Shown piece by piece: positions 21,001 through 35,297 of a stretch of 52,866 nt of DNA. A program made the position numbers and the translations under genes. The stretch spans positions 1-52,866 of the forward strand of contig JAADVB010000125.1 in assembly GCA_023334545.1 (NCBI GenBank). The letters are read 5' to 3'. Under the pieces are notes generated by a model. It was not told the origin of the DNA. It did no database searches and was given only the letters and a program-made list of their open reading frames with translations. Source of the stretch: Salisapilia sapeloensis CBS 127946 (Eukaryota; Protista; Oomycota). Numbering within the stretch: the stretch's first letter is position 1; each line of letters starts with the position of its first letter.

Positions 21001-24000
21001 TACTCTCGTGCGCTTGTGGGAACATGAATGTTTATGCACCTTTAGCGATTCTGTAGCTAGTTACGCCAAAACGCGTCAAGAAATAGTCGGGGAAGTAAAA
21101 ATGATGAAGCGAAATATTGAGTCGATTGAGCGTCGCCAATGGGAGCATCGAAAGGAAAATGGTAATTCTATTGTAGTGTCTACTGCAGCAACAGCGTCGC
21201 TGGGACGATCTCAAAAATCATCCGAAGTACCTACGACTGTAAACGGCTATCTAAATCATCTATCAAAGATGGCTAATGAGCAATGCTCAATACGAAATCC
21301 TCCATTGTTTCAAGGGAGAGCGTCACTGCGGCGGCTTCGTGCTGCTCCAGATGTGAGTAATCAAGCAGTGGTATCTTCTCGTACGACGGAGGCAAGTATG
21401 TGGGCGCTTGTTATTAGCGATATGTACTACGCTATAGTAGAAGATCGACATAACGAGATGGATAATTCTGGTCAAGATGATAGGCGATTACGCAGAAGTA
21501 GCATTGCACTCATTCGTAAGAGTACTTTAAATCTAAAAGCAGCTACCATGAAATACTTGAAGCAGCGTACATATGCAGAAGTGTACACGGACGTGACTCC
21601 ACGAGATGTGATCCACAATCGGATGCAATTGTTCTACGATGCATTTTTGTACTACAGCACTCAACATGGTACAAAACGGAATATTCCAGGCCAATTTTTA
21701 GCATTGGCGAGTGGAGCGAAAGCTACCAATGTCATAAAACCTCAGATTTCCACTGATATGGTAAGTTACTTTTACAGAATATCCTGTCCACATCAATTTA
21801 CAATTCATCCGTAAATGTAGGCAGAGCGGATAGCAAAGATAGAGCGTGTGCATTGTATGCCTGGTTCCAAGCTACTGCTTGTAGGAACACATGGATCGGG
21901 ACGAGAAGAGATTGTTCGATACATCACTTCTCTAAATTCGGAACAGAAGATTTTAACTTATGAACCAGTCGACTGTCTTACTACAACACGAAGAGTTTGG
22001 TATAAACTGCTCAAGGAAATTTTTTATCGAATAGGAGTTGACTGTCAGGATGTGACGCTTCTGCTCCGACACATAGATGACTTGCCATCTGACATTGCTA
22101 CCGATTTGCTATGTTTAAGTTCATCCGGAGATATTTCCAGTCATTTTACGCTAGAGGAACAGATCGAGCTGACAGCGAACGTGCGAGATGAAAAGTTGGT
22201 CTATCTAGAAAACGAACGGGAACGTGCTCTTCGCGAGATTTCGTATAGGAACGAAACGCAGATGAATGAAGCAATCAATGAATGGAAGTTAGAGAATGCA
22301 GAAGCTTCTACATCAGAAGAACAAATTGCGTTCCAAGATATCGAACGGAATTTCGAGCAACTGTTGCTACGAAATGAAAGAAAGGTTAAACTTCGCTTCC
22401 AACAGGAGTTTGATGATTATCACCGTCATGCTGAAGTCGAAACGGACAATATGACATCTACAATCATGTCTTTGATGCGCCCACTCGGCATAACAAGTGG
22501 AAAATGGCAAAAGATTGTTGCTAGCGTGAGACAGAAGCTTCATATTATTATTTGCGTCGACCAAGCAGAGTATACACAGGTGCAAGAGATATATCCAACC
22601 TTGACTGCTACCTATGCATCAATAGATCTACCGCGGCTTCGTGTGGATGATCTACAATCCATCGTTCATGGCCACTTGTGCGCAGAGCTTCAGCAATGTC
22701 GAAAAGAAATGTTGAATTCATTTGCAAATGGCGAAGGTCACTCGCAAGGTTTTGGTATCAAACAAATACTCTCCGAATTGGATCAAAAGCTACAGCTAGT
22801 TGCACGTGTAGTAGCTGAGATGCACACAAGTGCTAGAAAAAGTATTAAGACAGGTTATGCACTTCAGACCAAAGCTGCATTAAAAATTCCTGCTTACTTT
22901 ACCCGCATCTTGATATATCTCTACAACCAGGAAATAGCATCGCTTGAACGGTCTGAACGTGTGGTGCACAGTTGGGACGTTGTTCAAACTCAACTAAACA
23001 ATTTCAAGCTGGAGCATGAACAACAAAAACAGAAGCTAAAGGAGTTAGAACAAAACATTATCCAAAATAGTGCATGTGAAGGTGAACTTAAATTGCTTCT
23101 AAAGCAGCACGAAGCCATTGAGCTAGAGCACAGAATCACAGTTGACAAAGAAACAGAGGTAATGTATGAAATCGAAGCGCAAGCACAACGCGAGTTGCGC
23201 ATACCTCTCCAAATTCTAGACGAAGCAAATGATGCTCTTTCACAACTTGACAAGAGGCATGTCGTCGAAATCAAGTCATTTACAAACCCACCGGCACTCG
23301 TATGTCTTGTACTGGAAGCAGTTTGTGTTCTGTTTAATTTGGAGTCGACCTGGGGCCACGCACGTCGGCTGTTGCATGACTCAAACTTCGTGCAAAAAAT
23401 GTTGACATTTGATAAGGACGCTATATCAGATGAGGTTATACAGACGTTAGAGCAAAACTATCTCCAGCATCCTCAAATGACGAAAGAAGCAGTGGAACGA
23501 CAGAGCGTTGCAGCGGGTAAAATGGTTCAGTGGGTACGAGCCATGCATCAATATGCTGTCATTAAAAAGCAAGTACTTCCGACAGTAACGCTACTGGAGG
23601 AGGCTCGTGAACGTCTAAAATCTGTACAGCATAAATTCTACGTAAGCAAAGAACAAGCAGAGGAAACAAGGGCATCAGTTTTGAAATGCACTGAAGGCTT
23701 AAATGCAAGTAGAGGTACCCAAAAGGAGTGCATCGACAGTATAGAGCTGCTGAACATGCAGATGAAACATGCAACAGACGTGTTAAACGAGTTGCAAGTT
23801 TATGCTGAAAACCATAGAGATATCATTCAAAGCGTGCAAATTGGACAATCTCAAGGTGTAATTTGGTGGAATGCGCTTTTCTATGCTGGATTTATTTCCT
23901 ACAACGCTTACATTGAGAATGCTAACAAACTTTTCAGCGAGTGGGAGCGGATTTACTGGACCTTGTGTACTAATGAAGACACGAGAAGGCATATTCGGTG

Positions 24001-27000
24001 CAGATATATGCCAAGTTTCCATCTTGAACTCTCGACAGAAGAAGATGATAGTAGCGTCAACAGTAGTGATGGTAGCAGCTCCGAAGATGAGCATCAAATG
24101 CCATCTCCAGCAGCTCAAGAAGAAGTTGAAAGTGTTATTGAGCTATTTTATAGGAAAGGCTCGCTTCAATGGGAGTTGTGTCACGCCACAGACACCTTGT
24201 ATTCGATTAAGCAGCTTCGAAACGCTTTTGCTTTCAACCTAGCAATGTCTAGTGACTTTCCACTGATGCTTATTACTCAATACTCGGTAATTGCCGAAGA
24301 AATGCTGCAGAAGAGTTTTGAAGCCTTATGGAAATCATCACGCCCGAAGAAAATTTCTGCGAATGCAAGAGATGTGGAAGACACAATCCTATCTGCCATG
24401 ACTAGTGGACACGTTCTGTTGCTCATGGATGTCGAACCTTCACACTTCATGCTCAATCATGCGCTTCTCAGCGATGCTATTGCATGGAAAACGAAGAATT
24501 ATGATGGAGACGTATACTTGAAACGTACTGTTAATGATGCTGAAAATGCCCAAGACAACACTATTCTAGTTAACAAATCCTTTCGCCTCATACTCACCTC
24601 TTATATGCGTCTGGATACCTTTGGTGAATTACTTGGTGACATTCCCATTATATCAGCAGATCTGCCAAGCTGCCAAGCCAGTATGGAAATAATGGATAGG
24701 CTTTGGGCTAAAGGCAAAGATATTGCGAGTATGCAAGTTCGCGAAAGTCTAAATTCGTACAGTATTCACGACGCTAAATGGAAAGAGATTTATGCGGAAG
24801 TTGGCTTCAAAGTTGAGGCAGTGAGTATGTCGAAAACATATTCACTGTTAGAGATAGTAGATGTTTGTGAACATTATAAACGACTCGTGGATCTGGAGGT
24901 GGTTTGCACAAGGGAGCGCACTGATATTGAAGTCCAGCTACAATCTTTCGATTCAAAGTTACCGATGGCAAAGCTTGGTCAATCTTTGTTTTGTGGTATG
25001 TCATGCAACTTCCAGACAACCTCGAATGGGGATGAGGGTAGACTCTCCTTTGGAGCATTTTTAGAGCTCTTTGTTTCCACTGTCTCTGATGTATTGGCTG
25101 CATCAAAAGATGACCATGGTGCAGAAACGAATATGCAGCAAGATCATGGTTATGGCATATCTTTAAGTGATAAGCTAGGACTGACATTGCGCAGACGTCG
25201 GTCTAAAGCAGAAAGTATGTCTGCTTTAAAGCTTCAAGTACTGGAAAGGATGCTACGATCCTTGTACTTTCTAGTACACGATTCTGCTCATTGGTGCCAT
25301 CTTTTGCTTTACGTCGTACAAGAACTCGAGCAGAAACCTAGAGGAAGTGTCCTCTTTAACCTCACAGACTTACGTGATGAAATTCGGCTCGAAAAATGTG
25401 CTTCGGAAGGCAAATTGAACGCTGATGAAAGTTATGACGACAGTTTAAGCTTCAGAGCATTGTGTATCTTAAAGCAACTAGAGATCATTCTGGGCAAAAA
25501 AACCTCTTTCAAAATACTTCAGAGCGATGTCAGCGACATGGAACTAATTGCTGCGGTTGTACATGATGACAAGCAGGCATCCGATGAGTTAATAAATCCA
25601 TTGCTGGACGATGTCCAGTCGCGCTGGGAGCGCGTATGCATTGCATTATGCATCCGTCCTACGATCGTGCAACCATTGTGTTTTGAGATACTGTCCGTTC
25701 ATGGAATAAGGCTGCATGATTTGTGCTTCACAATTTCCCAGCTTCCATTGCATGAAGCTATGCAACTCTTCCCTGCTACGATGGCAACTATGCTGGTTTC
25801 AAAGGCTAAAGCAAGTAGCTTTTCATTTGCAGCAAATTTATTCTTTCACACGACTAACTCGAACAACACTCGTCTGCAAATTCTTCACTCACTCCTCTGC
25901 GATGAACAGCTGGGCATAAATGATTATCGGACTTGGTGTGACCACTTGGACATTATTTTGGAAGGAGCAGCCAAGTTGGTGTCCTCCAAGCAGCATATCA
26001 GGGACTTGGATAATGAAAAAGAAAGTTTGCTTCTGTATGATATAAAAGACGTGAAGACTGATGAATCATGGCAAGAGGTCTTTCAGTATGCATCTGAAGG
26101 ATTTGAAGCATTGAGAGAATCTCAAGAAGTTAATTGCGGCTTAGATTCAGCTCCGTTGGAAGGAGAGACGATCAGGCCTGATCTGTCGAGCGAGAAATGT
26201 GGCCGATGCATACTGTTGCACTCTACCGATTGCTCAGCCATTCCAAGTCACTTGCGAGAGCGCATCATATGTGCCCAACTTGAAAGAACACATACGGCTA
26301 TAACCAATTACTTTCAGCGTTGTTTGATGGTATCCATCCTACGACTTGCAACTTGTAGCTCGTTTGCAAGGCATTTCAATGCTCAAGAGAAAGATGTGAG
26401 TAAGTTGGAGCAAATTAGAGGCGGCGAAAACTCGGCATCTGATCGACGTACAGTCTGGTACAGTATAAGTGCTCTTGTGCTCGTACATTCACTGCTCACT
26501 CTTCGAAGAATCGCGTCACCACTTTTGCAAAACCGTTTGGAAGGTTTCAATGAATTTAGTGAATCCGAATCGCTGGTCTTAGCTATTAATGAGCTTATTT
26601 CGACAATGCAAAGCACAAAGTCTGGAGTAAGGAGCGCTTTAAAGATGAAGGAAAGGTTTTTGCATGCCGTTCAAGCGTCCTACGGAGTCAAAGCCAAATC
26701 CGAAACAGAAGCCCGCCTTATCGTACGGCTTGCAGACCAATGCTTCTCTCTCATGACATCAAAACTAAATGCTCGTCCTACTCACCACACCTTTTCACCA
26801 AAATTTCCTATCGTAAAAGCTGATAGCGTCAGTCCGTTGACACAGCGAGTTGCTACCGTGAAGACTGGCAGCATGAACTCATTGACATCAATTCCTCTTC
26901 AACCTTCACCTGCTACTCAACCGCTAAAGCAAAAGCCTCTAGGCATACCTCGACTTGGATCATTTGGCCGTGCATACTCAATTCGAAACCTGCACACACT

Positions 27001-28192
27001 GTCAGCGCTTGACTTTCCGATCGATAGCCTCGAAAATGGACCGGAGACACCAGGTGAATGGCTAGAATTGTGGTGGGCGTACAGCACTTCGATCGATACG
27101 AATCTGGAAAAAAGAGTTCTCAGACTATTTGGTCTCTCTACGGTACAATTATCTCGTGCACGATGGGGTTCAAGCTCATTGGATGAAGAGGAAATGGTGC
27201 ACAAATTCATGTCAAGGGATTACCAGGGAACGGTCAATAGCAAACGTCCGCAAATGGTATACAATGATGTCGTCAAGGTGCTTGAAAGTATCATTGATCA
27301 TGAACTACCAAAGCCATCTATCGGGTCCGTACATGGAAAGTTGGATTCGAGTGAAGTGGAAAGAGCCCACCTACAACAACAGGAGAGGTATAACGGTGAA
27401 GTTTCTCATCTTGAAGCAAGTTTCACGCACTTGCTAAAAGCTCTTCAAGAAGGATACGAAGAAGCGAAGCATCAAATCATTACGAATGACGACACCAATG
27501 GGGATTTCGATGATATCTCTGTTCAACAAATTGCAGCATTTAACAGCCATTACCAAAAGGAACTGAAGGATGTGGAGCGTATACTGCGAAACAGAATCCC
27601 TCTTACAGTCACTACGGAGAAGACGAAATGGATGCAGACAGAATGGAATCTCCAGAACTTGTTGGTATATTATCAGTCGTGGGGCCTTATCTTAAACAAG
27701 CATGAAGAGATGGATACAAGCTATTTCCAATTCTATGCTCCGGCGTACAACTCTCCGTCTTGCTTGAGGCAGTTGATTGATACTGCCAAGCAAGAATATG
27801 CGAGTAAAAATGACATTAACTTGAGCTTATTCGATGTCAGCTATGAACTGCTTGTGCATGAGGGTGAAGAGGATTACGATGGAGTATTTGCACTCGTCCA
27901 TGGATTCTGTCTAGCTGGAGCGACGTGGTCAAGTACCTACCGACGCATAGAGATTGATACGTCGACAACGAGTAACAGTCGAGGGAAACCTGTACAGCTA
28001 GTCTGTCGACTGCTTCCTCAAGACAAAGCTCAACAATCGCATGGAGTCGTGCTGTCACGTATCGAACTTGTGCCTCGAATTTGGCAAAATGAAGACTATA
28101 TTAGCTTTGAGCTTCCGATCGACTCTCAAAGTCTCAAGACCGCTCCTTTCGCGACGTCGTATTTGACATGTGACATACCAGCAAAATACTAA
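12064..28192 (+). CDS. Highly divergent axonemal dynein heavy chain-like protein, 14 predicted exons, ~5,100 aa
   Basis: Exons 12064-12102, 12155-12211, 12276-12339, 12398-12727, 12781-12917, 12974-13164, 13228-13450, 13505-14995, 15071-15319, 15383-15610, 15684-17048, 17114-17335, 17399-21760, 21821-28192 join in one frame via 13 GT-AG introns of 52-75 nt. Recognisable: YNPYDI and YYTISSQG tail motifs, DHC_N2, GPVEIWL, four P-loop remnants, FYVDDLHLP, stalk/MTBD, VHGFCLAGATW C-terminus. The first three exons are least certain. Confidence 0.88.
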
Positions 28193-28858: not shown

Positions 28859-29419
28859 ATGGAGCAAATTGTGCAAATGCAAGATGATATTCACAAGCTC
28901 AAGAAGATGATGGACGCTGTCTTCGAGAAAATGTACTCCTCTAATACTCTACCGAAGTAGTTGTATGACAAGAGTTGTTGAATCGCGATGTGGTTGCTTG
29001 AATGGTAGTGAACAACACACATCCGACTCGCCATATAGTGCAGCAGACGCATACGGTATCCTTTTCTCAATCATACCTCCATATAGGTGCAGTATCATAA
29101 ATAGTATCTACAGGTGACAAAGATCGGATTGTCGAGATGCTCAACCGCCTCAGCTCCAAAGTACATCTTCTCAATAGCCTACTAGCTCCCTGCTTTCTAA
29201 CAGCCCACTTAGATGGCAGACGCAGACATGTCCAACCTAACGGCTGAGCCACTCAAAGACGCCACTGCAGCTGATATAGCTGTATGTATCTCTTAAATCC
29301 CCATGTTTCTATCATCCTAACACTCTCTCCAGGAGCTTAAACGCAAGATCGAAACGACTGAAACAGAACGACAGCACCTCCATCGTCGAGCCGGTGCGTC
29401 TTTCAAAGGTCTACAGTAA
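28859..29419 (+). CDS. Small 119-aa helical/coiled-coil protein, 5 exons (28859-28932, 28973-29055, 29114-29160, 29213-29281, 29333-29419)
   Basis: Four GT-AG introns (40, 58, 52, 51 nt; CTAAC branch-like motifs in the last two) give one continuous frame: MEQIVQMQDDIHKLKKMMDAVFEKIVVESR...GDKDRIVEMLNRLSSKMADAD...ELKRKIETTETERQHLHRRAGASFKGLQ. Confidence 0.72.
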
Positions 29420-29450
29420 GATACCCAAAGACAAATCCATTTTCGTTTTC

Positions 29451-31286
29451 TTATGCAAACGCAAACTCTTGACTCTCTGGCCAAATGTCTTGCGTCAGCT
29501 CCTGTTCTTCCTGCAGCTCCAGCGCTCTCGAAGCATTCGCAATCACATCCACCTTTTGCTTCTTCGGAGTCGGCTCTGCGTCACTGCTCTCCTGACTTCG
29601 CGAAATGGCTACTTGGGCACACTCTTCATCATACTCGGCTTGCAATTCTTCTGCCAGTTGATCCCAAATACCTTCTCGTTGCAGATAGAACTGCAAGTCT
29701 GCTTCGCTCTGGAACCAGTCTTCCCCCAGCACACTCTTACGTGTCGCGCCTGGCTTGAAGTAGTCGTATTCGAATCGACCTGGCTCATACCGCCATCCAC
29801 GTCGCACTAACATGTTCACAGCGATGCCGTTGGTCAATTGACGTGTCTGAGCTTCCACCAGACTAGCTGATCGCTTGCGTTGGACAGGTTCCTCCACCTT
29901 TTTCTCTATCTTGGCCTTGGGTTTCGTGCTTTTCACGTGTTTCTTGGCAGATTTAGGGGCAGGCTTAGATGCAGGTGTGTCCTGTCCAGACGCAGCGTCC
30001 TCTCTGGTAAAAGTAAACTCAGCAGGTTCATTCTTCATAGCTTCCTTCTTGACAGATTTCTTCTTGAGAGCTTCACGTCGTTTCTTATCGTCCAACCGAC
30101 GTTTAGTGCGTCCAAGATGCTTTTCAAATTCATCTGCTTCCATCTCATGGATCATATCGTCATGCTCTTGCTTGAGCTCTTCCCTCACGCGAGCCCAGAC
30201 TCCAGACTCTTTCAAGTAATTTTCCAACGCGACAGACGATTTAAAGTAGTTTTCACCTTCCTTTTGGTTGGACGTATCGTACGTCGGGGAAAAGTAGTCG
30301 TACTCGAACATACCTGGCTTGTGAGTCCATCCTTCTTCCTGTAGTTTATCATAGACGCGTCCGAATTTACATTCAAACGTTGGACCTTCGTACTTGAAGG
30401 TGGAAATAGCCACTTGATATGGATCCTCGTTATCTGTTTTCTTCGGTGCTTTCTTCTTCGCGTGGATCTTTTTATCCGCACTCGCTGTCTTGTATGGAGG
30501 CGTGATGAGGTCTTTTGTCGAAGCCGGAGATGGTGTATTAAAGATCTTCTTCCTTGCCTTCGACGTAGGTTTCTCTGTCTTTTTACTTAGTTTAGAAAAA
30601 TCGAGCTTCTGACGACCGTCAGCAGAGTCGCCGAGGTCAATGATGATCTTTTCATTCGCTAAACAACGACCGATGGTACACGCGACGCTCGTGAACATCG
30701 TTTCGTTCGGAATGAGTTGCGTAAATGGCGTATTCGGTTGGACAAACACTGTTTCCTGACCGAGCGCCATGGACGTCCAGTGAAAGTATTTTTGAGCAAT
30801 GTGCCATAGTCGATCCCACACTTGACGATCCTTTTCCTCTTGCTCCATCGCTTTCGAAGGATGCTTCGAAGCATCTTCCGCTGAAGTATAGAGGAATTTC
30901 CAACATGCATGCTCCTTACTTTCAAAGGTATTAATGTTCGGACGCAAGTCTTGGAACGTAGTGCCTGGCATGAGGCAGTAGGTAGCATCTGGACTCTCTA
31001 ACAAGTTCCATCCGCGGTTCTGAAGGACTTCCCAGATCAAGTCAAAGGATGTTTCGAATCTCTTTTTCGCCGATAAAGGACCTTCCGGAGACGATTGCAC
31101 CGATGTATTCTCCTTTTCTACCTCCTTTTCCCCTCCCTCTTCTACCACTGGTTCCTCTGCTTCATACTCGACGACTTGTGTGTTGGATAGCTGAATGTCA
31201 TCCATGGCATCCGCTCCAGATGAGACGAAGGCATCTGGATTAAAGTCAATATGTTGTTCAGACGATGGAGTATCTATCTCTGTCAT
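29451..31286 (-). CDS. Uncharacterised 611-aa protein with four GW repeats (possibly MBD/TAM-fold-like)
   Basis: Intact ORF; first ATG at 31286 (the track start at 31397 is TTG). Repeats begin IWEVLQNRGW, LWHIAQKYFHW, VYDKLQEEGW and AVNMLVRRGW, separated by Lys-rich linkers. Confidence 0.85.
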   Translation of the reverse strand: MTEIDTPSSEQHIDFNPDAFVSSGADAMDDIQLSNTQVVEYEAEEPVVEEGGEKEVEKENTSVQSSPEGPLSAKKRFETSFDLIWEVLQNRGWNLLESPDATYCLMPGTTFQDLRPNINTFESKEHACWKFLYTSAEDASKHPSKAMEQEEKDRQVWDRLWHIAQKYFHWTSMALGQETVFVQPNTPFTQLIPNETMFTSVACTIGRCLANEKIIIDLGDSADGRQKLDFSKLSKKTEKPTSKARKKIFNTPSPASTKDLITPPYKTASADKKIHAKKKAPKKTDNEDPYQVAISTFKYEGPTFECKFGRVYDKLQEEGWTHKPGMFEYDYFSPTYDTSNQKEGENYFKSSVALENYLKESGVWARVREELKQEHDDMIHEMEADEFEKHLGRTKRRLDDKKRREALKKKSVKKEAMKNEPAEFTFTREDAASGQDTPASKPAPKSAKKHVKSTKPKAKIEKKVEEPVQRKRSASLVEAQTRQLTNGIAVNMLVRRGWRYEPGRFEYDYFKPGATRKSVLGEDWFQSEADLQFYLQREGIWDQLAEELQAEYDEECAQVAISRSQESSDAEPTPKKQKVDVIANASRALELQEEQELTQDIWPESQEFAFA

Positions 31287-31488
31287 ATTCCCTACTCTTT
31301 CTACACCTCCAAGTACGAGTACACTCGATGTACTCAGCTCTAGAAAATTTAAATGGTGCTCCTCGCGCTTTTTGTCCGCTTTTGTCGTTCCCACCAAACG
31401 ATATGATTCGTAGATATTCTAAAACGTAGAATAAGAGTGGTAGAAATACAGGATAAGAAATGTAACTGATATTAAAAGTGATAAGCTC

Positions 31489-31524
31489 TTCCCGCCAAAA
31501 CGTTGAAAAAGGAAGCGCCAAAAA
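31489..31524 (-). promoter_or_regulatory. Two E2F-type sites in the bidirectional CDC6 promoter
   Basis: Reverse complements read TTTTGGCGGGAA (31489-31500) and TTTTTGGCGC (31515-31524), matching the E2F/DP consensus TTTSSCGS, 27-62 nt upstream of the CDC6 ATG. Confidence 0.7.
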
Positions 31525-31531
31525 CCATTTT
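31525..31531 (+). promoter_or_regulatory. Possible initiator (YCAYTYY-type) element upstream of CDC6
   Basis: CCATTTT fits the oomycete-type INR consensus, 20 nt before the ATG. The motif is short and low-information. Confidence 0.35.
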
Positions 31532-31551
31532 CCGATCGACTTCGAGACACG

Positions 31552-34500
31552 ATGGATGGACCATTGGGTGTATACTGGGTGCGTCTAGAGAATCAAAAGA
31601 TGCCGGTCCCTTGGCCGGCTTGTGTCTATCATAGCTATGACGCTGCGAGACGACATGGACATGACGTCTCGGTCTTCTATATGAACAAACCGGCGCTCGA
31701 ACCCGAAGATCGCGTCGTCTTCTTCTTCGGTCTCGATCCCCTTCACTTGAACAAGGACGATTCGATCAGTCCTAAAAAACAGCTTCTAAGCGCCCACCTC
31801 ACTTCGATCCATAAAACACCCTTCGAAGGCTCGTCGACCTTGCGGTCGATCGCCAAGACCATGGGCTTGTCTCGTCCGAACTTGGCGATGGCTGAGGACG
31901 ATGTTGAGCTTGAAGAAGCATGCAGACAAGCGAGTGACTTTTTACGACTGGAGAGTGATGACGCTGCAAGGGAATTCTTCTCGGCCTTAATGCTCCATTC
32001 GATTAATCAAGTGGAGGAGAATGCGTCTCAAGCCAGTGAAGAAGAGGCCAAGGAAGACGAAGAGCACACAAACGAAAATACAGAGCTATCTAGTCAGAAG
32101 ACTCAGCCGATCGAGACTGCATCAGCTCCAGCCTCTGAACCCACCGGTGGATTATCTATCCACATTCAAGACGAATGCTGGAAGAAGATGCAAGACGCTG
32201 GATGGAACACGATGGTGCTTTCTGGACAAGAGTTATTTAAAAAGCCTGGCGTCGGTTTTGGAAGCATGCAGCCTGGTATTAATATCTTCGACAACCTAAT
32301 GGACGCCTGCGCCATCTTTGTCTGTGAGCAACTGCAGAGCGAAAACGCTGATCCAGACCTCGTGTCCATGTTCTGGACGATGCTAGAGCAACAAGGATGG
32401 CAGACGATGTTTCTAAGCGGATCCCCTGTCTACGCCATGCCGAAAGTTAGCTTCGTGACCATGTTTCCTGATGTCAATCTCTTTAAAACGAAGCTAGAAG
32501 CCATCTCTAAGTACTTCAACAACAATGGTATGCTCCAAAGTAAACAGAAAGCAGTCGCCAAACCGAAACCCAAGTCTAAGTCGTCTTCAAATCTGTTTAA
32601 AAAGCCAAAAGAGCATGAAAGGAAAGAACCAACGTATCACCCAAGAGCTAGATCGACGAACAAACGCACGACAAATGTTCCGCATCGATATGACACGGGT
32701 GAAAAGCCCCGATCGAAACGTTCAACGGACGATTTAAAGCCTGGCGTGTTGGAAAAAGCTTTATTGGATCAAGGATGGTTCTATAAAGCTGGCAGCGTGG
32801 GTGGATCCTACACATACTACCGCCCGCACTGCAAAGGTGTCGACATCGAACGTCTGCAGTTCGGTCGTGATTACTACAGTAACCTCGAAGCAGTTGAGAT
32901 GGCTCTAAAAGCCAGTGGCGAGTACTATCCGCTAAAGGAAAAAGCACGAGCACCAATCACTACCACTGTGAAAGCATCTAAACCACAGCCAAAGAAAGTT
33001 GTACGAAAGCCCAAGGCTGAAACGAAGAAGCGAAAGATTAGCGAATCGGAGTTTGAGGATGAAGCAGACTGTATGGAATCGGAAGAGATGGTCACTCCGG
33101 AACCAAAAGAGCGTTTCACGAAGAAACGTAAGGCTTTATCTAACATCTCCAACGTCCGCGACGACATCTCTCCTGATACGGAGAAACCAAAGACACCTTC
33201 TATTCTGAAGAAACCAGCTCCATCTCGAAGTATCGCGACGAACTTTTCTCCAGACGTACATGACACACAACCACTCGAATCGACGGATTTAAACCAACTA
33301 CTAAAAGACGTGATGCCGAGACTGTCGACTGGTTTCATCCCGTCAGCATTTAATTATCGCAAGCAAGAGTGGAGTCAAATCGAAACGTTCCTTCGAGACT
33401 GTTTCCGACACACACAAGGTGCGAGTTTATACCTCTCTGGCGCTCCTGGGAGTGGTAAATCCGCGCTACTTTCGTCGGAAATGAATAATATCAAGGACAT
33501 GTACTATAACGAGACGAAAGACCGATCGGACGTGCCTACCTTTAAGAGTCTACACGTCAACGCCGTGACTTTGAAAGGTACATCTGCTCTATTTCAAACA
33601 GCAGCGAAAGAGCTGACGGGAGACACCTACACGTCTGGCGAGAAAGCATTGGAAGCGTTGGAACGAGCGACAGACATACAGTCGAGTAACGCTTCCATGC
33701 TGCTGTTGGTCATTGATGAAATCGACTTTTTATTGACACACAAGACGTGGGAAGGAGACTTGCTGCGTCTCTTTGAACTCGCACATCGACGCAACCATAG
33801 CCTCCTACTCGTTGGTGTCGCAAATCAAGTAGATTTCGCTGAAAGACATCTCGCGAGCTTACGCAAGCAGATGCCTCAATGCTCTCCTGCAACCGTTGTC
33901 TTCACTCCGTACTCGTTCATGTCGATCCAGAACATCTTGATCGATCGATTAGGCGGACGATCGGCGGCACAGAGACTGCTGGACATGAATGGACTAGCTT
34001 TCCTCGCTCGAAAAGTCTGCTCGACATCTGGAGACGTTCGACTTGCTCTCGACATTTGCCGCCGACTCTTGTCCAACGTCAATCAAGATAAGGAGAATGC
34101 GTTGAAGAAGAAAGGCCCGGTGGTTGGATTGAGTAAAGTGATTTCTGTCGTGAAACAGAGTCTGGATGCAGGTAGCTCGCATGTTGTCGAGTCCTTGCCT
34201 CGGAATCTAAAGCTTGTGCTTCTGGCATGCACTCGAGCGATGACGAGTGGCGGGAAAGATGATTCTGCGCGGTTGATTCCGACGAATGCATTGTACTCGA
34301 CGTATTCGGAGAATTTAGGCTCAGCAGGTGTCTCGAAGCGCATGAGTTCGCGAGAGTTTGCACAGAGCTTAGAGACGTTGGCGTCGAATGGGTTGCTTAG
34401 CTACAATGTAAAGAAGGGAGATACGGTCAAGCTGCTTTTCCGAACGAGTGATGTGCTGCAGACCTTGAGACGAGATGAGTTTATTGCAAGAGTCATGTAG
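31552..34500 (+). CDS. CDC6: Cell division control protein 6 (replication-licensing AAA+ ATPase) with extended N-terminus (PWWP-like domain plus three GW repeats), 982 aa
   Basis: SLYLSGAPGSGKS (Walker A, 33439-33462), LLLVIDEIDFLL (Walker B), LVGVANQVD, VFTPYS, FLARKVCSTSGDVRLALDICRR and a C-terminal winged-helix-like region. These match Cdc6 (SLYLSGAPGTGKT, ARKVSAVSGDVRKALDVCRR) better than Orc1. Confidence 0.9.
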   Translation: MDGPLGVYWVRLENQKMPVPWPACVYHSYDAARRHGHDVSVFYMNKPALEPEDRVVFFFGLDPLHLNKDDSISPKKQLLSAHLTSIHKTPFEGSSTLRSIAKTMGLSRPNLAMAEDDVELEEACRQASDFLRLESDDAAREFFSALMLHSINQVEENASQASEEEAKEDEEHTNENTELSSQKTQPIETASAPASEPTGGLSIHIQDECWKKMQDAGWNTMVLSGQELFKKPGVGFGSMQPGINIFDNLMDACAIFVCEQLQSENADPDLVSMFWTMLEQQGWQTMFLSGSPVYAMPKVSFVTMFPDVNLFKTKLEAISKYFNNNGMLQSKQKAVAKPKPKSKSSSNLFKKPKEHERKEPTYHPRARSTNKRTTNVPHRYDTGEKPRSKRSTDDLKPGVLEKALLDQGWFYKAGSVGGSYTYYRPHCKGVDIERLQFGRDYYSNLEAVEMALKASGEYYPLKEKARAPITTTVKASKPQPKKVVRKPKAETKKRKISESEFEDEADCMESEEMVTPEPKERFTKKRKALSNISNVRDDISPDTEKPKTPSILKKPAPSRSIATNFSPDVHDTQPLESTDLNQLLKDVMPRLSTGFIPSAFNYRKQEWSQIETFLRDCFRHTQGASLYLSGAPGSGKSALLSSEMNNIKDMYYNETKDRSDVPTFKSLHVNAVTLKGTSALFQTAAKELTGDTYTSGEKALEALERATDIQSSNASMLLLVIDEIDFLLTHKTWEGDLLRLFELAHRRNHSLLLVGVANQVDFAERHLASLRKQMPQCSPATVVFTPYSFMSIQNILIDRLGGRSAAQRLLDMNGLAFLARKVCSTSGDVRLALDICRRLLSNVNQDKENALKKKGPVVGLSKVISVVKQSLDAGSSHVVESLPRNLKLVLLACTRAMTSGGKDDSARLIPTNALYSTYSENLGSAGVSKRMSSREFAQSLETLASNGLLSYNVKKGDTVKLLFRTSDVLQTLRRDEFIARVM

Positions 34501-34521
34501 ACGATTTAATATCATGGAGAT

Positions 34522-35297
34522 TTACTTTTTGACGTATCGAGTTTCTATCTTTCGACTTGTACTTTTATAATCCGATTGCACCGTAAGTAGATTTGTGTTT
34601 CTAGATAAGGCTTGATGGAGAAGATGCTGCGAATCGAGTGGTAGAGAGTTGTTGGAAAAGTTCAGGAAGGACAGGTGCGAGTTGAATGTGAGCACGTAGG
34701 AAAGAGCGAGGACACCTGCTTGGTCTCGAAAGAGAGATACAAGGTTGGAAGAAATGTCCAGCGCAGAGATGCAACGGTGGAACGCAACTGCGCCGAGCAG
34801 GATACGGCATCCTTCTGGCTGAAGATCGTTGTCTGCAACGCTAAGCCAACCATCTTAAGATCTATTCGATAGATGTACATGTAGAGAGATCGTACTTGAG
34901 ATAGCGCAAGCTGGAGCGTTTGACTTCTATGCCCTTAGCAAGCGCTTTAACACCGCGGTAGTCTGGCCGATAGGGATTCCCGACAAGGTCAGACGAGTCG
35001 AGTTGCAAAAATTGGATGCATCCATTAAAGATCAAAGCTTTACCGACTATTTCTGCGCCAACGGGACCGATGGGCACATGCGAAAGTCTAGATCGATTTG
35101 ATCAGAAGAGGCAGCTTCCACGCTAGTATACTAACCTACCTCAAGTGGCGTAAAGTCGAACCTGGTTTCCCAATCTCGCTTCCAATCGTTTCGATATCGA
35201 ACTTACCCTCGAAAGAAAAATAGACCCGTGTCTCTTCTTCTCCACATCGATCAATCGCTTCTTGGATTTGACCAGCATCCGCCAACCGATTCCACAT
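34522..35297 (-). CDS. RNI-like leucine-rich repeat protein, 3 exons (35297-35140, 35087-34896, 34840-34522), 222 aa
   Basis: Introns of 52 and 55 nt restore frame. LRRs: LRHLRLSHVPIGPVGAEIVGKAL, LRYLNVADNDLQPEGCRILL, ISALDISSN, LSFLNFSNNSL. Confidence 0.82.

What the first reader, a model, noticed from the sequence alone, without database searches (positions are those of the whole stretch)
29451..34500. Head-to-head pair: CDC6 and an ATPase-less gene built from the same repeats in the same order
Seen: both proteins carry two type-A repeats followed by type-B repeat(s). Type A in Cdc6 is CWKKMQDAGW...KKPGVGFGSMQPGINIFDNLMDAC; in the partner it is IWEVLQNRGW...LMPGTTFQDLRPNINTFESKEHAC. Type B in Cdc6 is LLDQGWFYKAG...YTYYRP...FGRDYYSNLEAVEMALKASGEY; in the partner it is LQEEGWTHKPG...YDYFSP...EGENYFKSSVALENYLKESGVW. 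Cdc6 is PWWP-A-A-B-AAA+; the partner is A-A-B-B. Their ATGs are 265 bp apart. Inference: an old inverted partial duplication produced a co-regulated reader-only partner that could compete with, recruit or guide Cdc6 at origins. I know of no description of such a two-gene licensing module.
Basis: partly seen in the sequence, partly recalled or inferred. Interest (0 to 1): 0.88.

Follow-up and report, generated by a model that had tools for sequence, protein, structure and literature searches.

The report
Cdc6 and its reader-only paralog pair
An oomycete replication-licensing gene (Cdc6) sits head-to-head with an expressed, conserved copy of its own N-terminal repeat block that lacks the ATPase, and the same repeat type is also fused to ORC2 and ORC5 in other protists, which suggests it targets licensing proteins to chromatin or DNA.

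Summary
The 982-aa Cdc6-type protein (31552-34500, +) and a 611-aa protein (29451-31286, -) align colinearly (BLASTP E 2e-15). Cdc6 reads PWWP-like-A-A-B-AAA+, the partner A-A-B-B, and the ATGs are 265 bp apart.

What tools added:
- A and B are two subtypes of one small fold and are related to Pfam DUF7650.
- Every other oomycete Cdc6 examined has A-A-B-B, so this genome's Cdc6 has lost B2.
- Repeat trees pair A1 with A1 and A2 with A2, so the block was copied as a unit.
- The head-to-head arrangement was seen directly in six genomes and inferred in a seventh. Aphanomyces instead has a same-strand cluster.
- RNA contigs show both genes transcribed at similar depth, about 50 bp apart.
- E2F-type sites are enriched in all six shared promoters examined.
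- The partner has its own invariant C-terminal peptide motif.

B-type repeats occur in at least 234 protein clusters, including ORC2, ORC5 and BRCT proteins. Strong A-type hits and the A-A-B-B order were seen only in Cdc6, the partner and Aphanomyces paralogs.

A role at origins is inferred, not shown. The MBD assignment is inconclusive. I found no published description. Other first-stage notes on this window flagged the repeats, the PWWP and the E2F sites.

The parts
31552..34500 (+). Cdc6/Orc1-type AAA+ licensing protein, 982 aa, single exon
   Evidence: ORF. Pfam AAA_22, AAA_16 and AAA, with Cdc6_C below cut-off. Best PDB hits are human CDC6 at 114 bits and ORC1 at 99 bits. An RNA contig covers 31424-34461 with no differences.
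31552..31863 (+). PWWP-like N-terminal domain (residues 1-104), present only in Cdc6
   Evidence: Conserved in 13 orthologs. Pfam PWWP is sub-threshold in 6 of 13, best E 6e-4. 46 of 100 Atlas feature hits are PWWP clusters. Absent from the partner.
32164..32328 (+). Cdc6 repeat A1
   Evidence: HMM hits. AF2 tandem model, pLDDT 85.
32359..32523 (+). Cdc6 repeat A2
   Evidence: HMM hits. AF2 tandem model.
32734..32949 (+). Cdc6 repeat B1, the only B; B2 is lost in this genome
   Evidence: HMM hit. Falls in the Cdc6_B1 clade with 96/96 support. AF2 model, pLDDT 89.
33355..34419 (+). AAA+ ATPase with Walker A (GAPGSGKS) and Walker B (VIDEID) plus C-terminal winged helix
   Evidence: Pfam stretches 602-767 and 878-956. 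PDB alignments cover 595-849. Motifs read in the translation.
29451..31286 (-). Partner gene, 611 aa from the ATG at 31286: acidic head, A1-A2, basic linker, B1, basic linker, B2, C-terminal motif; no PWWP, no ATPase
   Evidence: ORF. No Pfam family. Orthologs at about 33% identity. RNA contig 29423-31364/31372.
30885..31049 (-). Partner repeat A1
   Evidence: partner_A1 clade 95/89.
30654..30821 (-). Partner repeat A2
   Evidence: partner_A2 clade 97/99, joined to Cdc6_A2 at 96/88.
30171..30371 (-). Partner repeat B1
29640..29837 (-). Partner repeat B2
29454..29498 (-). Partner-specific C-terminal peptide motif. The window reads LTQDIWPESQEFAFA; orthologs read L/I-T-N-D-I-W-x-N-S-x-x-F-x-F.
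   Evidence: The motif lies at the extreme C-terminus of 19 partner orthologs and of all five other head-to-head loci. It is absent from every Cdc6 and from the Aphanomyces cluster.
31287..31551 (.). Shared divergent promoter region. The untranscribed gap is about 31373-31423. E2F-type sites lie at 31489-31496 (+) and 31515-31522 (-).
   Evidence: Sequence. Transcript ends. Motif matches. Enrichment across six orthologous regions is 9 observed against 0.26 expected.

Best explanation
Shown. This is a real, conserved, divergently transcribed pair of paralogs. Oomycete Cdc6 carries a PWWP-like domain followed by four copies (three in this genome) of a small helix-hairpin-strand-helix module in two subtypes, A1-A2-B1-B2. 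The module is related to Pfam DUF7650. The A1-A2-B1-B2 block was copied as a unit, in inverted orientation, next to Cdc6. The best tree places this after the split from Saprolegniales, in the ancestor of Peronosporomycetes. The copy lost or never had the PWWP and the ATPase. It kept the charge pattern of the linkers and gained an invariant C-terminal peptide motif. Both genes are expressed from a shared region that carries conserved E2F-type sites.

Inferred. The module is a DNA- or chromatin-targeting device for licensing proteins, because arrays of it are also fused to ORC2, ORC5, Orc1-like and BRCT proteins in other protists. The partner would then bind the same chromatin or DNA sites as Cdc6 through its four modules and use its C-terminal motif to dock another factor. 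That would make it an adaptor or gatekeeper of licensing made in the same G1/S window as Cdc6.
For: - Homology and colinearity.
- One fold for A and B.
- Ancestral A-A-B-B in Cdc6 of Phytophthora, Peronosclerospora, Pythium, Globisporangium, Albugo, Aphanomyces and Thraustotheca.
- Positional orthology of the repeats: the A1/A2 split has 96/88 support, the Cdc6_B1 clade 96/96, and Cdc6_B2 joins most partner_B2 copies (7 of 9) at 81/77.
- Timing: Peronosporomycete Cdc6 (99/95) and partner group together, apart from all Aphanomyces copies (98/93).
- Head-to-head synteny in the window, L001-L004 and L006, plus adjacent locus tags in Pythium oligandrum.
- Expression of both genes at k-mer depth 98/80 and 109/123 in two RNA samples, with spliced neighbours proving RNA origin.
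- E2F-type sites, 9 observed against 0.26 expected, Poisson 1e-11.
- Partner-only C-terminal motif.
- B arrays on ORC5 (six clusters), ORC2 (three), BRCT (three), and single BEN, CHD-SANT and PCC proteins.
- DUF7650 hits coincide with B-HMM hits.
Against: - There is no functional data of any kind, and DNA or chromatin binding by the module is untested.
- PDB fold matches are all weak (Z of 5 or less), so the fold gives no firm biochemical lead.
- Pfam and PDB sequence searches with the window repeats find nothing.
- Co-expression rests on two samples.
- The AU test does not reject the alternative that the partner and the Aphanomyces second paralog share one older origin (p 0.063).
- The B-only tree is unresolved.
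- The A profile was never searched exhaustively, so A could occur elsewhere.
- The E2F-like sites lie downstream of the longest RNA contig's 5' end (31424), so their promoter role is uncertain.
Confidence: 0.55

Rival explanations
1. Sir3-like neofunctionalisation. The partner arose from Cdc6 but now works in something other than licensing, such as silencing, repair or transposon control. It stays next to Cdc6 only because the two genes share promoter elements that cannot be split.
For: The same module occurs in BRCT, BEN, CHD-SANT and Tudor/Agenet-type proteins, and by fold in PiggyBac-derived proteins. The partner has a private C-terminal motif that Cdc6 lacks. Long partner-specific branches separate its repeats from those of Cdc6.
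Against: The shared promoter keeps E2F-type sites typical of replication genes in all six genomes examined. The linker charge pattern and module order stay parallel to Cdc6. The module is repeatedly attached to pre-RC subunits.
Confidence: 0.25
2. Pure competitor. The partner is a dominant-negative-like decoy that occupies the Cdc6 N-terminal binding sites and so limits or times licensing, with no recruiting role.
For: It has the same four modules without the ATPase. Transcript depth is similar. Transcription is from the same promoter region.
Against: A decoy needs no extra conserved docking peptide, yet the C-terminal motif is the most invariant part of the protein. The partner lacks the PWWP-like domain, so it would not copy the full Cdc6 targeting.
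Confidence: 0.12
3. The modules are methyl-DNA readers (an MBD/TAM-type fold), and the pair reads a DNA methylation mark, which in oomycetes would be 6mA.
For: Atlas features point to MBD and Clr2_transil clusters. UniRef names one partner ortholog and several relatives 'MBD domain-containing'. MBD and TAM structures recur among weak fold hits, with SETDB2 at Z 3.7, AtMBD6 at 3.4 and MBD4 at 3.3. 6mA is reported in Phytophthora (PMC6211444, listed).
Against: Pfam MBD never hits. Profiles find no MBD chain in the PDB. dsRBD and HicA folds score as well or better. All Z values are 5 or below. The extra N-terminal helix gives a helix-strand-strand-strand-helix order, which from my own knowledge of those folds is more like dsRBD or HicA.
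Confidence: 0.15
4. The partner is a decaying or mis-annotated duplicate and the adjacency has no meaning.
For: None beyond the absence of any Pfam hit.
Against: The 611-codon ORF is intact and transcribed. Orthologs of 554-904 aa occur in Phytophthora, Plasmopara, Hyaloperonospora, Peronosclerospora, Pythium and Globisporangium. The C-terminal motif is invariant. Synteny is conserved.
Confidence: 0.02

Closest known systems
Orc1-Sir3 paralog pair of budding yeast (established knowledge, not tested here)
   Same: An initiator-family gene was duplicated, and the copy keeps the N-terminal chromatin-binding part and takes on a regulatory or chromatin role.
   Different: Sir3 keeps a degenerate AAA+ domain and is unlinked to ORC1. 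Here the copy has no ATPase at all, derives from Cdc6 rather than Orc1, and has stayed head-to-head with its parent in every genome where the pair was seen.
Reader domains on ORC1: BAH in animals (H4K20me2) and BAH-PHD in plants (cited in PMC7058166)
   Same: A chromatin-reading N-terminal extension on an Orc1/Cdc6-family ATPase, joined to it by long charged linkers.
   Different: The host here looks like Cdc6 rather than Orc1. The readers are a PWWP-like domain plus DUF7650-like modules, not BAH.
Pfam DUF7650 (PF24662)
   Same: DUF7650 hits fall on the same segments as B-profile hits in diatom-type and other proteins. Atlas shape TM to a plant DUF7650/DUF7952 cluster is 0.66 for B, and the same cluster is matched by the A tandem.
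   Different: The window's own repeats do not reach DUF7650 even at E 10. No function is recorded for the DUF, and no paper names it.
MBD/TAM domains, and the dsRBD/HicA fold
   Same: Small alpha/beta nucleic-acid-binding modules of about 65-70 residues, with weak fold similarity to both groups.
   Different: No sequence-profile link to either. All Z values are 5 or below, so neither assignment can be made.
ORCA/LRWD1-type adaptors that tether ORC to marked chromatin (established knowledge)
   Same: A non-ATPase reader protein proposed to connect licensing factors to chromatin.
   Different: No homology to these proteins. Here the adaptor would be a paralog of the licensing factor's own reader block.

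Membership tests
Orc1/Cdc6 AAA+ initiator family | AAA+ core with Walker A and Walker B, and best similarity to solved Cdc6/Orc1 chains | tested here: met
   GAPGSGKS and VIDEID are read in the translation. Pfam AAA_22, AAA_16 and AAA are above cut-off. 18 PDB hits are all Cdc6 or Orc1, down to E 6e-32.
Orc1/Cdc6 AAA+ initiator family | C-terminal winged-helix domain (Cdc6_C) | tested here: inconclusive
   PF09079 scores 22.6 bits against a cut-off of 25.1, E 1e-4, residues 878-956. Archaeal Cdc6 chains align through residues 949-950.
Cdc6 rather than Orc1 | Closer to Cdc6 than to Orc1 references, and a separate Orc1 in the same genome | tested here: inconclusive
   Human CDC6 114 against ORC1 99 bits; yeast Cdc6 55 against Orc1 39; but fly ORC1 96 against Cdc6 75. 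The best non-oomycete named hit is an insect Cdc6, and a Globisporangium ortholog is named 'Cell division control protein'. The nearest Atlas clusters are Cdc6-named. A separate ORC1 elsewhere in this genome is only an unchecked scan note. No tree with reference Orc1 sequences could be built.
PWWP domain (PF00855) | Match to the Pfam profile | tested here: inconclusive
   The window sequence gives no hit. 6 of 13 orthologs give sub-threshold hits, best E 6e-4. A profile search against the PDB finds no PWWP chain. Atlas features give 46 of 100 hits in PWWP clusters, top score 0.87. No structure was predicted for this part.
MBD (PF01429) / TAM | Profile match to MBD, and a fold match standing clear of background | tested here: not met
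   No Pfam MBD hit for any repeat or relative. No MBD chain is found with either profile. Fold Z is 2.5-3.7, no better than dsRBD hits.
Pfam DUF7650 | Profile match | tested here: inconclusive
   There is no direct hit on the window repeats. The link is transitive: the B profile and DUF7650 hit the same segments in P0062, P0035, P0044 and P0067, and 15 of 76 further B-containing proteins carry DUF7650. Shape TM is 0.66.
Conserved bidirectional gene pair | The same two genes head-to-head in several lineages, both transcribed | tested here: met
   Seen in the window, L001-L004 and L006, and inferred from Pythium oligandrum locus tags. Transcripts of both genes are seen. Not met in Aphanomyces, where the paralogs are tandem on one strand.

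The most novel reading that the evidence does not exclude
The DUF7650-like module is an origin-targeting DNA or chromatin reader used widely outside animals and fungi, attached in different lineages to ORC2, ORC5 or Cdc6. In Peronosporomycetes it has also been released as a free-standing four-module protein. That protein would be co-expressed with Cdc6 from one E2F-type promoter. It would mark the sites where Cdc6 can act and dock a licensing component through its invariant C-terminal peptide. Together the two genes would form a licensing module with no counterpart in the model organisms.
Probability: 0.2. Interest if true: 0.85.

Novelty: new variant of a known kind. Interest (0 to 1): 0.62.

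Why it matters
How replication origins are chosen outside yeast and animals is largely unknown. Oomycetes include major crop and animal pathogens with no origin maps.

This analysis gives three things. It defines a protein family: A-A-B-B plus a C-terminal motif, always beside Cdc6 where the locus was seen. It defines a domain family that recurs on ORC2, ORC5 and Cdc6 in several protist lineages. And it points to a shared E2F-type promoter.

Together these make a concrete question testable: do these modules target the licensing machinery to chromatin or DNA in these organisms, and does a paralog of the Cdc6 reader block control that step? If the modules bind nothing relevant, the pair is still a clean example of a partial gene duplicate held next to its parent over a long evolutionary span.

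Tried and rejected
- **'PWWP-B-B-B' family in Aphanomyces.** The label for P0037, P0039 and P0042 was an artefact of a phmmer hit to low-complexity sequence. Their N-termini do not align with the PWWP-like domain.
- **P0066 as an Orc1 homolog.** Some sources name this Aphanomyces astaci protein 'ORC1', but it has no PDB hit at E 1e-3. I did not count it as an initiator.
- **Fold searches.** Foldseek against the PDB gave nothing significant for either model. AFDB Swiss-Prot gave nothing either.
- **Sequence searches for a known family.** Pfam on each repeat and two profile searches of PDB sequences gave no known family.
- **B-domain tree with outgroups.** The tree of 65 B domains was too poorly resolved to show that Cdc6 and partner B repeats are exclusive relatives.
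- **Aphanomyces second paralog as partner ortholog.** The best tree says no, but the AU test does not reject it (p 0.063).
- **Literature.** Searches for an oomycete Cdc6/ORC description, PWWP-Cdc6, MBD-Cdc6 in green algae, and DUF7650 found nothing relevant.
- **Organism identity.** The window's organism could not be named. No database protein exceeds about 43% identity in the ATPase part or 36% overall, and run labels are coded.
- **Tool failure.** One alignment call failed internally and was repeated with fewer rows.
Full report
**1.

The window has a 982-codon ORF at 31552-34500 (+). It also has a 648-codon ORF on the minus strand at 29451-31397 that begins with TTG. RNA contigs end at 31364-31372, and the only ATG inside that transcript is at 31286.

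BLASTP of the two proteins gives one long colinear alignment at 22% identity and E 2e-15 for the single comparison. A second hit matches the Cdc6 B repeat to the partner's second B.

**2. The plus-strand gene is an Orc1/Cdc6-type initiator, probably Cdc6**

Pfam finds AAA_22, AAA_16 and AAA above cut-off, and the Cdc6 winged helix just below it. All 18 PDB sequence hits are Cdc6 or Orc1. Walker A and B are intact.

The Cdc6-versus-Orc1 question is not fully settled:
- Human and yeast references favour Cdc6, while fly references favour Orc1.
- The best named non-oomycete hit is an insect Cdc6, and a Globisporangium ortholog is annotated 'Cell division control protein'.
- The nearest Atlas clusters carry Cdc6 names.
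- An unchecked scan note reports a separate BAH-less ORC1 elsewhere in this genome.

I call it Cdc6 with moderate confidence.

The first 104 residues are conserved in 13 orthologs. They give sub-threshold Pfam PWWP hits in six of them and PWWP-dominated language-model neighbours. 'PWWP-like' is fair, but it is unproven.

**3. A and B are one fold**

AlphaFold models built from repeat alignments are confident: B has pLDDT 89 and the A1-A2 tandem has pLDDT 85. Each repeat is helix, beta-hairpin, short strand(s), helix.

Profile-profile comparison of A against B gives 91% probability and E 1e-6. Both models hit the same Atlas structural clusters.

**4. Orthologs, synteny and the ancestral state**

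Partner orthologs occur at about 33% identity in Phytophthora species, Peronosclerospora and Pythium insidiosum. The exhaustive search adds Globisporangium, Pythium oligandrum, [Pythium] brassicae, Plasmopara and Hyaloperonospora.

Cdc6 and the partner are head-to-head in P. boehmeriae, Pythium insidiosum, Peronosclerospora sorghi, P. ramorum and one Logan contig. The same small gene and ankyrin gene flank the pair in most of them. In Pythium oligandrum the two genes carry consecutive locus tags.

Every Cdc6 ortholog examined has A-A-B-B, or A-A-B-B-B in Aphanomyces euteiches. This includes Albugo laibachii, Aphanomyces and Thraustotheca. The window's single B falls in the Cdc6_B1 clade (96/96). 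The uninterrupted RNA contig rules out an assembly gap. So this genome's Cdc6 has lost B2.

**5. How the partner arose**

In the A tree the deepest well-supported split (96/88) separates A2 of both proteins from A1 of both. The window's Cdc6 A2 is a long branch and is misplaced. In the B tree Cdc6_B1 is a clade, and Cdc6_B2 joins most partner_B2 copies (7 of 9; 81/77). The block was therefore copied whole, after A1, A2, B1 and B2 had already diverged.

On concatenated A1+A2, all Aphanomyces copies form one group (98/93). Peronosporomycete Cdc6 (99/95, including Albugo and the window) groups with the partners. This places the duplication after the split from Saprolegniales. However, the AU test does not reject a single older origin shared with the Aphanomyces second paralog (p 0.063).

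Aphanomyces euteiches has a different layout, with four same-strand neighbours:
- a 497-aa B-B-B protein;
- Cdc6;
- a second A-A-B-B protein that keeps an Orc1/Cdc6-like ATPase;
- a 507-aa protein with an A-like head.

The locus is evidently prone to local duplication.

**6. The partner is not a passive remnant**

All 19 partner orthologs with a complete end, and all five other head-to-head loci, finish with the same peptide: L/I-T-N-D-I-W-x-N-S-x-x-F-x-F followed by one to three residues. The window version reads LTQDIWPESQEFAFA. No Cdc6 and no Aphanomyces gene has this peptide.

The partner also keeps the parental charge layout of acidic head, A1-A2, very basic linker, B1, basic linker, B2. 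It lacks the PWWP-like domain.

**7. Expression and promoter**

Runs X1 and X4 (organism A) are RNA-derived, because their contigs remove three GT..AG introns from the neighbouring small gene. They give separate contigs for the partner (29423-31364/31372) and for Cdc6 (31424-34461). There are no sequence differences, and depths are 98/80 and 109/123. A related organism's contig ends in poly(A) at about 34530.

The untranscribed gap can be as short as about 50 bp.

The window's intergenic region holds TTCCCGCC (31489-31496) and GCGCCAAA (31515-31522). Across six orthologous shared regions there are nine TTTSSCGC matches against 0.26 expected from the flanking DNA, Poisson 1e-11. Every region has at least one. 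That these sites bind an E2F-type factor in oomycetes is an inference.

**8. What the module is**

Sequence searches of the repeats against Pfam and the PDB find nothing.

PDB fold searches give only weak matches. The best is Z 5.0 to a phage protein, followed by dsRBDs at Z 3-4 and MBD or TAM domains at Z 2.5-3.7.

AlphaFold DB clusters give TM 0.55-0.87 (by query) to many proteins, apparently mostly stramenopile judging by accessions. Some are auto-named 'MBD domain-containing', others are PiggyBac-derived, BRCT or CAP-Gly proteins, and one is named 'ORC5'.

The exhaustive B-profile search finds 234 representative proteins at E 1e-3 or better, with 87 at 1e-10 or better. Of the 150 listed:
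- about 25 are PWWP-A-A-B-B-AAA Cdc6 orthologs or fragments of them;
- about 15 are partners;
- the rest carry two to sixteen B-type repeats.

In those other proteins, Pfam DUF7650 hits coincide with B hits. The Atlas gives TM 0.66 to a plant DUF7650/DUF7952 cluster.

The accompanying domains are the informative part:
- ORC5 in six clusters, one from the dinoflagellate Durusdinium;
- ORC2 in three clusters, including the two top hits with 13-16 repeats;
- Orc1/Cdc6-like ATPases;
- BRCT in three clusters;
- BEN, CHD SANT-like and PCC, one protein each.

An Atlas cluster of 278 Cdc6-winged-helix proteins, mostly chlorophyte, is auto-named 'MBD domain-containing'.

The module is thus a recurrent N-terminal appendage of pre-replicative-complex subunits and other chromatin proteins. 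This is the main reason to think it targets DNA or chromatin. No binding has been tested.

**9.

- 'Repeats scattered in many unrelated genes' is true for B. It was not seen for A or for the A-A-B-B order, but the A profile was not searched exhaustively.
- 'Not each other's closest repeat relatives' is not the case among Peronosporomycetes, although the B tree with outgroups is unresolved.
- 'Linkage and co-expression absent' fails on linkage, which is conserved. Both genes are expressed, but true co-variation is untested.

**10. Mechanism**

What is shown is a conserved, expressed, divergent paralog pair with a shared motif-bearing promoter and a partner-specific terminal peptide.

What is inferred is that the partner binds the same sites as the Cdc6 N-terminus and docks another factor. 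The rivals are a Sir3-like change of function, a pure decoy, and a methyl-DNA reader role. None can be excluded without experiments.

**11. Novelty**

I found no paper on this pair, on PWWP- or MBD-type Cdc6 fusions, or on DUF7650.

The general pattern is known: a reader-bearing initiator, with a paralog of that initiator recruited to a chromatin role. Examples are Orc1 BAH and Orc1/Sir3. I therefore rate this a new variant of a known kind. The wider association of the module with ORC2, ORC5 and Cdc6 is the most interesting by-product.

Noticed in passing
window 29000-29451 (+): A small spliced gene convergent with the partner. RNA contigs remove three GT..AG introns (29055-29112, 29161-29212, 29282-29332). 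A 107-aa gene sits in the same position in Phytophthora and Pythium loci (86 aa in Peronosclerospora).
   Followed up: partly
window 34462-34523: RNA contigs in X1 and X4 skip 62 nt with CT..AC ends, which is a minus-strand intron. It overlaps the Cdc6 stop codon, while a related organism's Cdc6 mRNA runs unspliced to a poly(A) at about 34530. This looks like a convergent transcript, probably from the downstream ankyrin-repeat gene, overlapping the Cdc6 3' end.
   Followed up: no
L005 5609-17704 (Aphanomyces euteiches): A same-strand cluster of four genes built from A- or B-type repeats: a 497-aa B-B-B protein, Cdc6, a second A-A-B-B protein with an Orc1/Cdc6-like ATPase, and a 507-aa protein with an A-like head. 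Public gene models split or fuse them differently (722, 1172 and 1704 aa).
   Followed up: partly
proteins P0010, P0011, P0082 (ORC2) and P0043, P0057, P0059, P0072, P0074, P0108 (ORC5): Arrays of 2-16 B-type (DUF7650-like) repeats are fused to the N-termini of ORC2 and ORC5 homologs from non-oomycete sources. One is the dinoflagellate Durusdinium trenchii; most of the others come from unnamed metagenome or Logan contigs.
   Followed up: partly
window 31460-31465: A minimal ATG-TAA upstream ORF lies in the Cdc6 leader, if transcription starts at or before 31424 as in the X1 contig.
   Followed up: no
window 33167-34530, runs X5 and X6: RNA contigs of a second, coded organism match only the 3' half of Cdc6 at 95-99% identity with many substitutions. 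This suggests a closely related strain or species in 2025 data sets.
   Followed up: no
window 21848-28192 (+): The long ORF upstream looks like the C-terminal part of a dynein heavy chain. Pythium insidiosum also has a dynein-type gene (Pfam MT) near its Cdc6-partner pair, so synteny may extend further.
   Followed up: no
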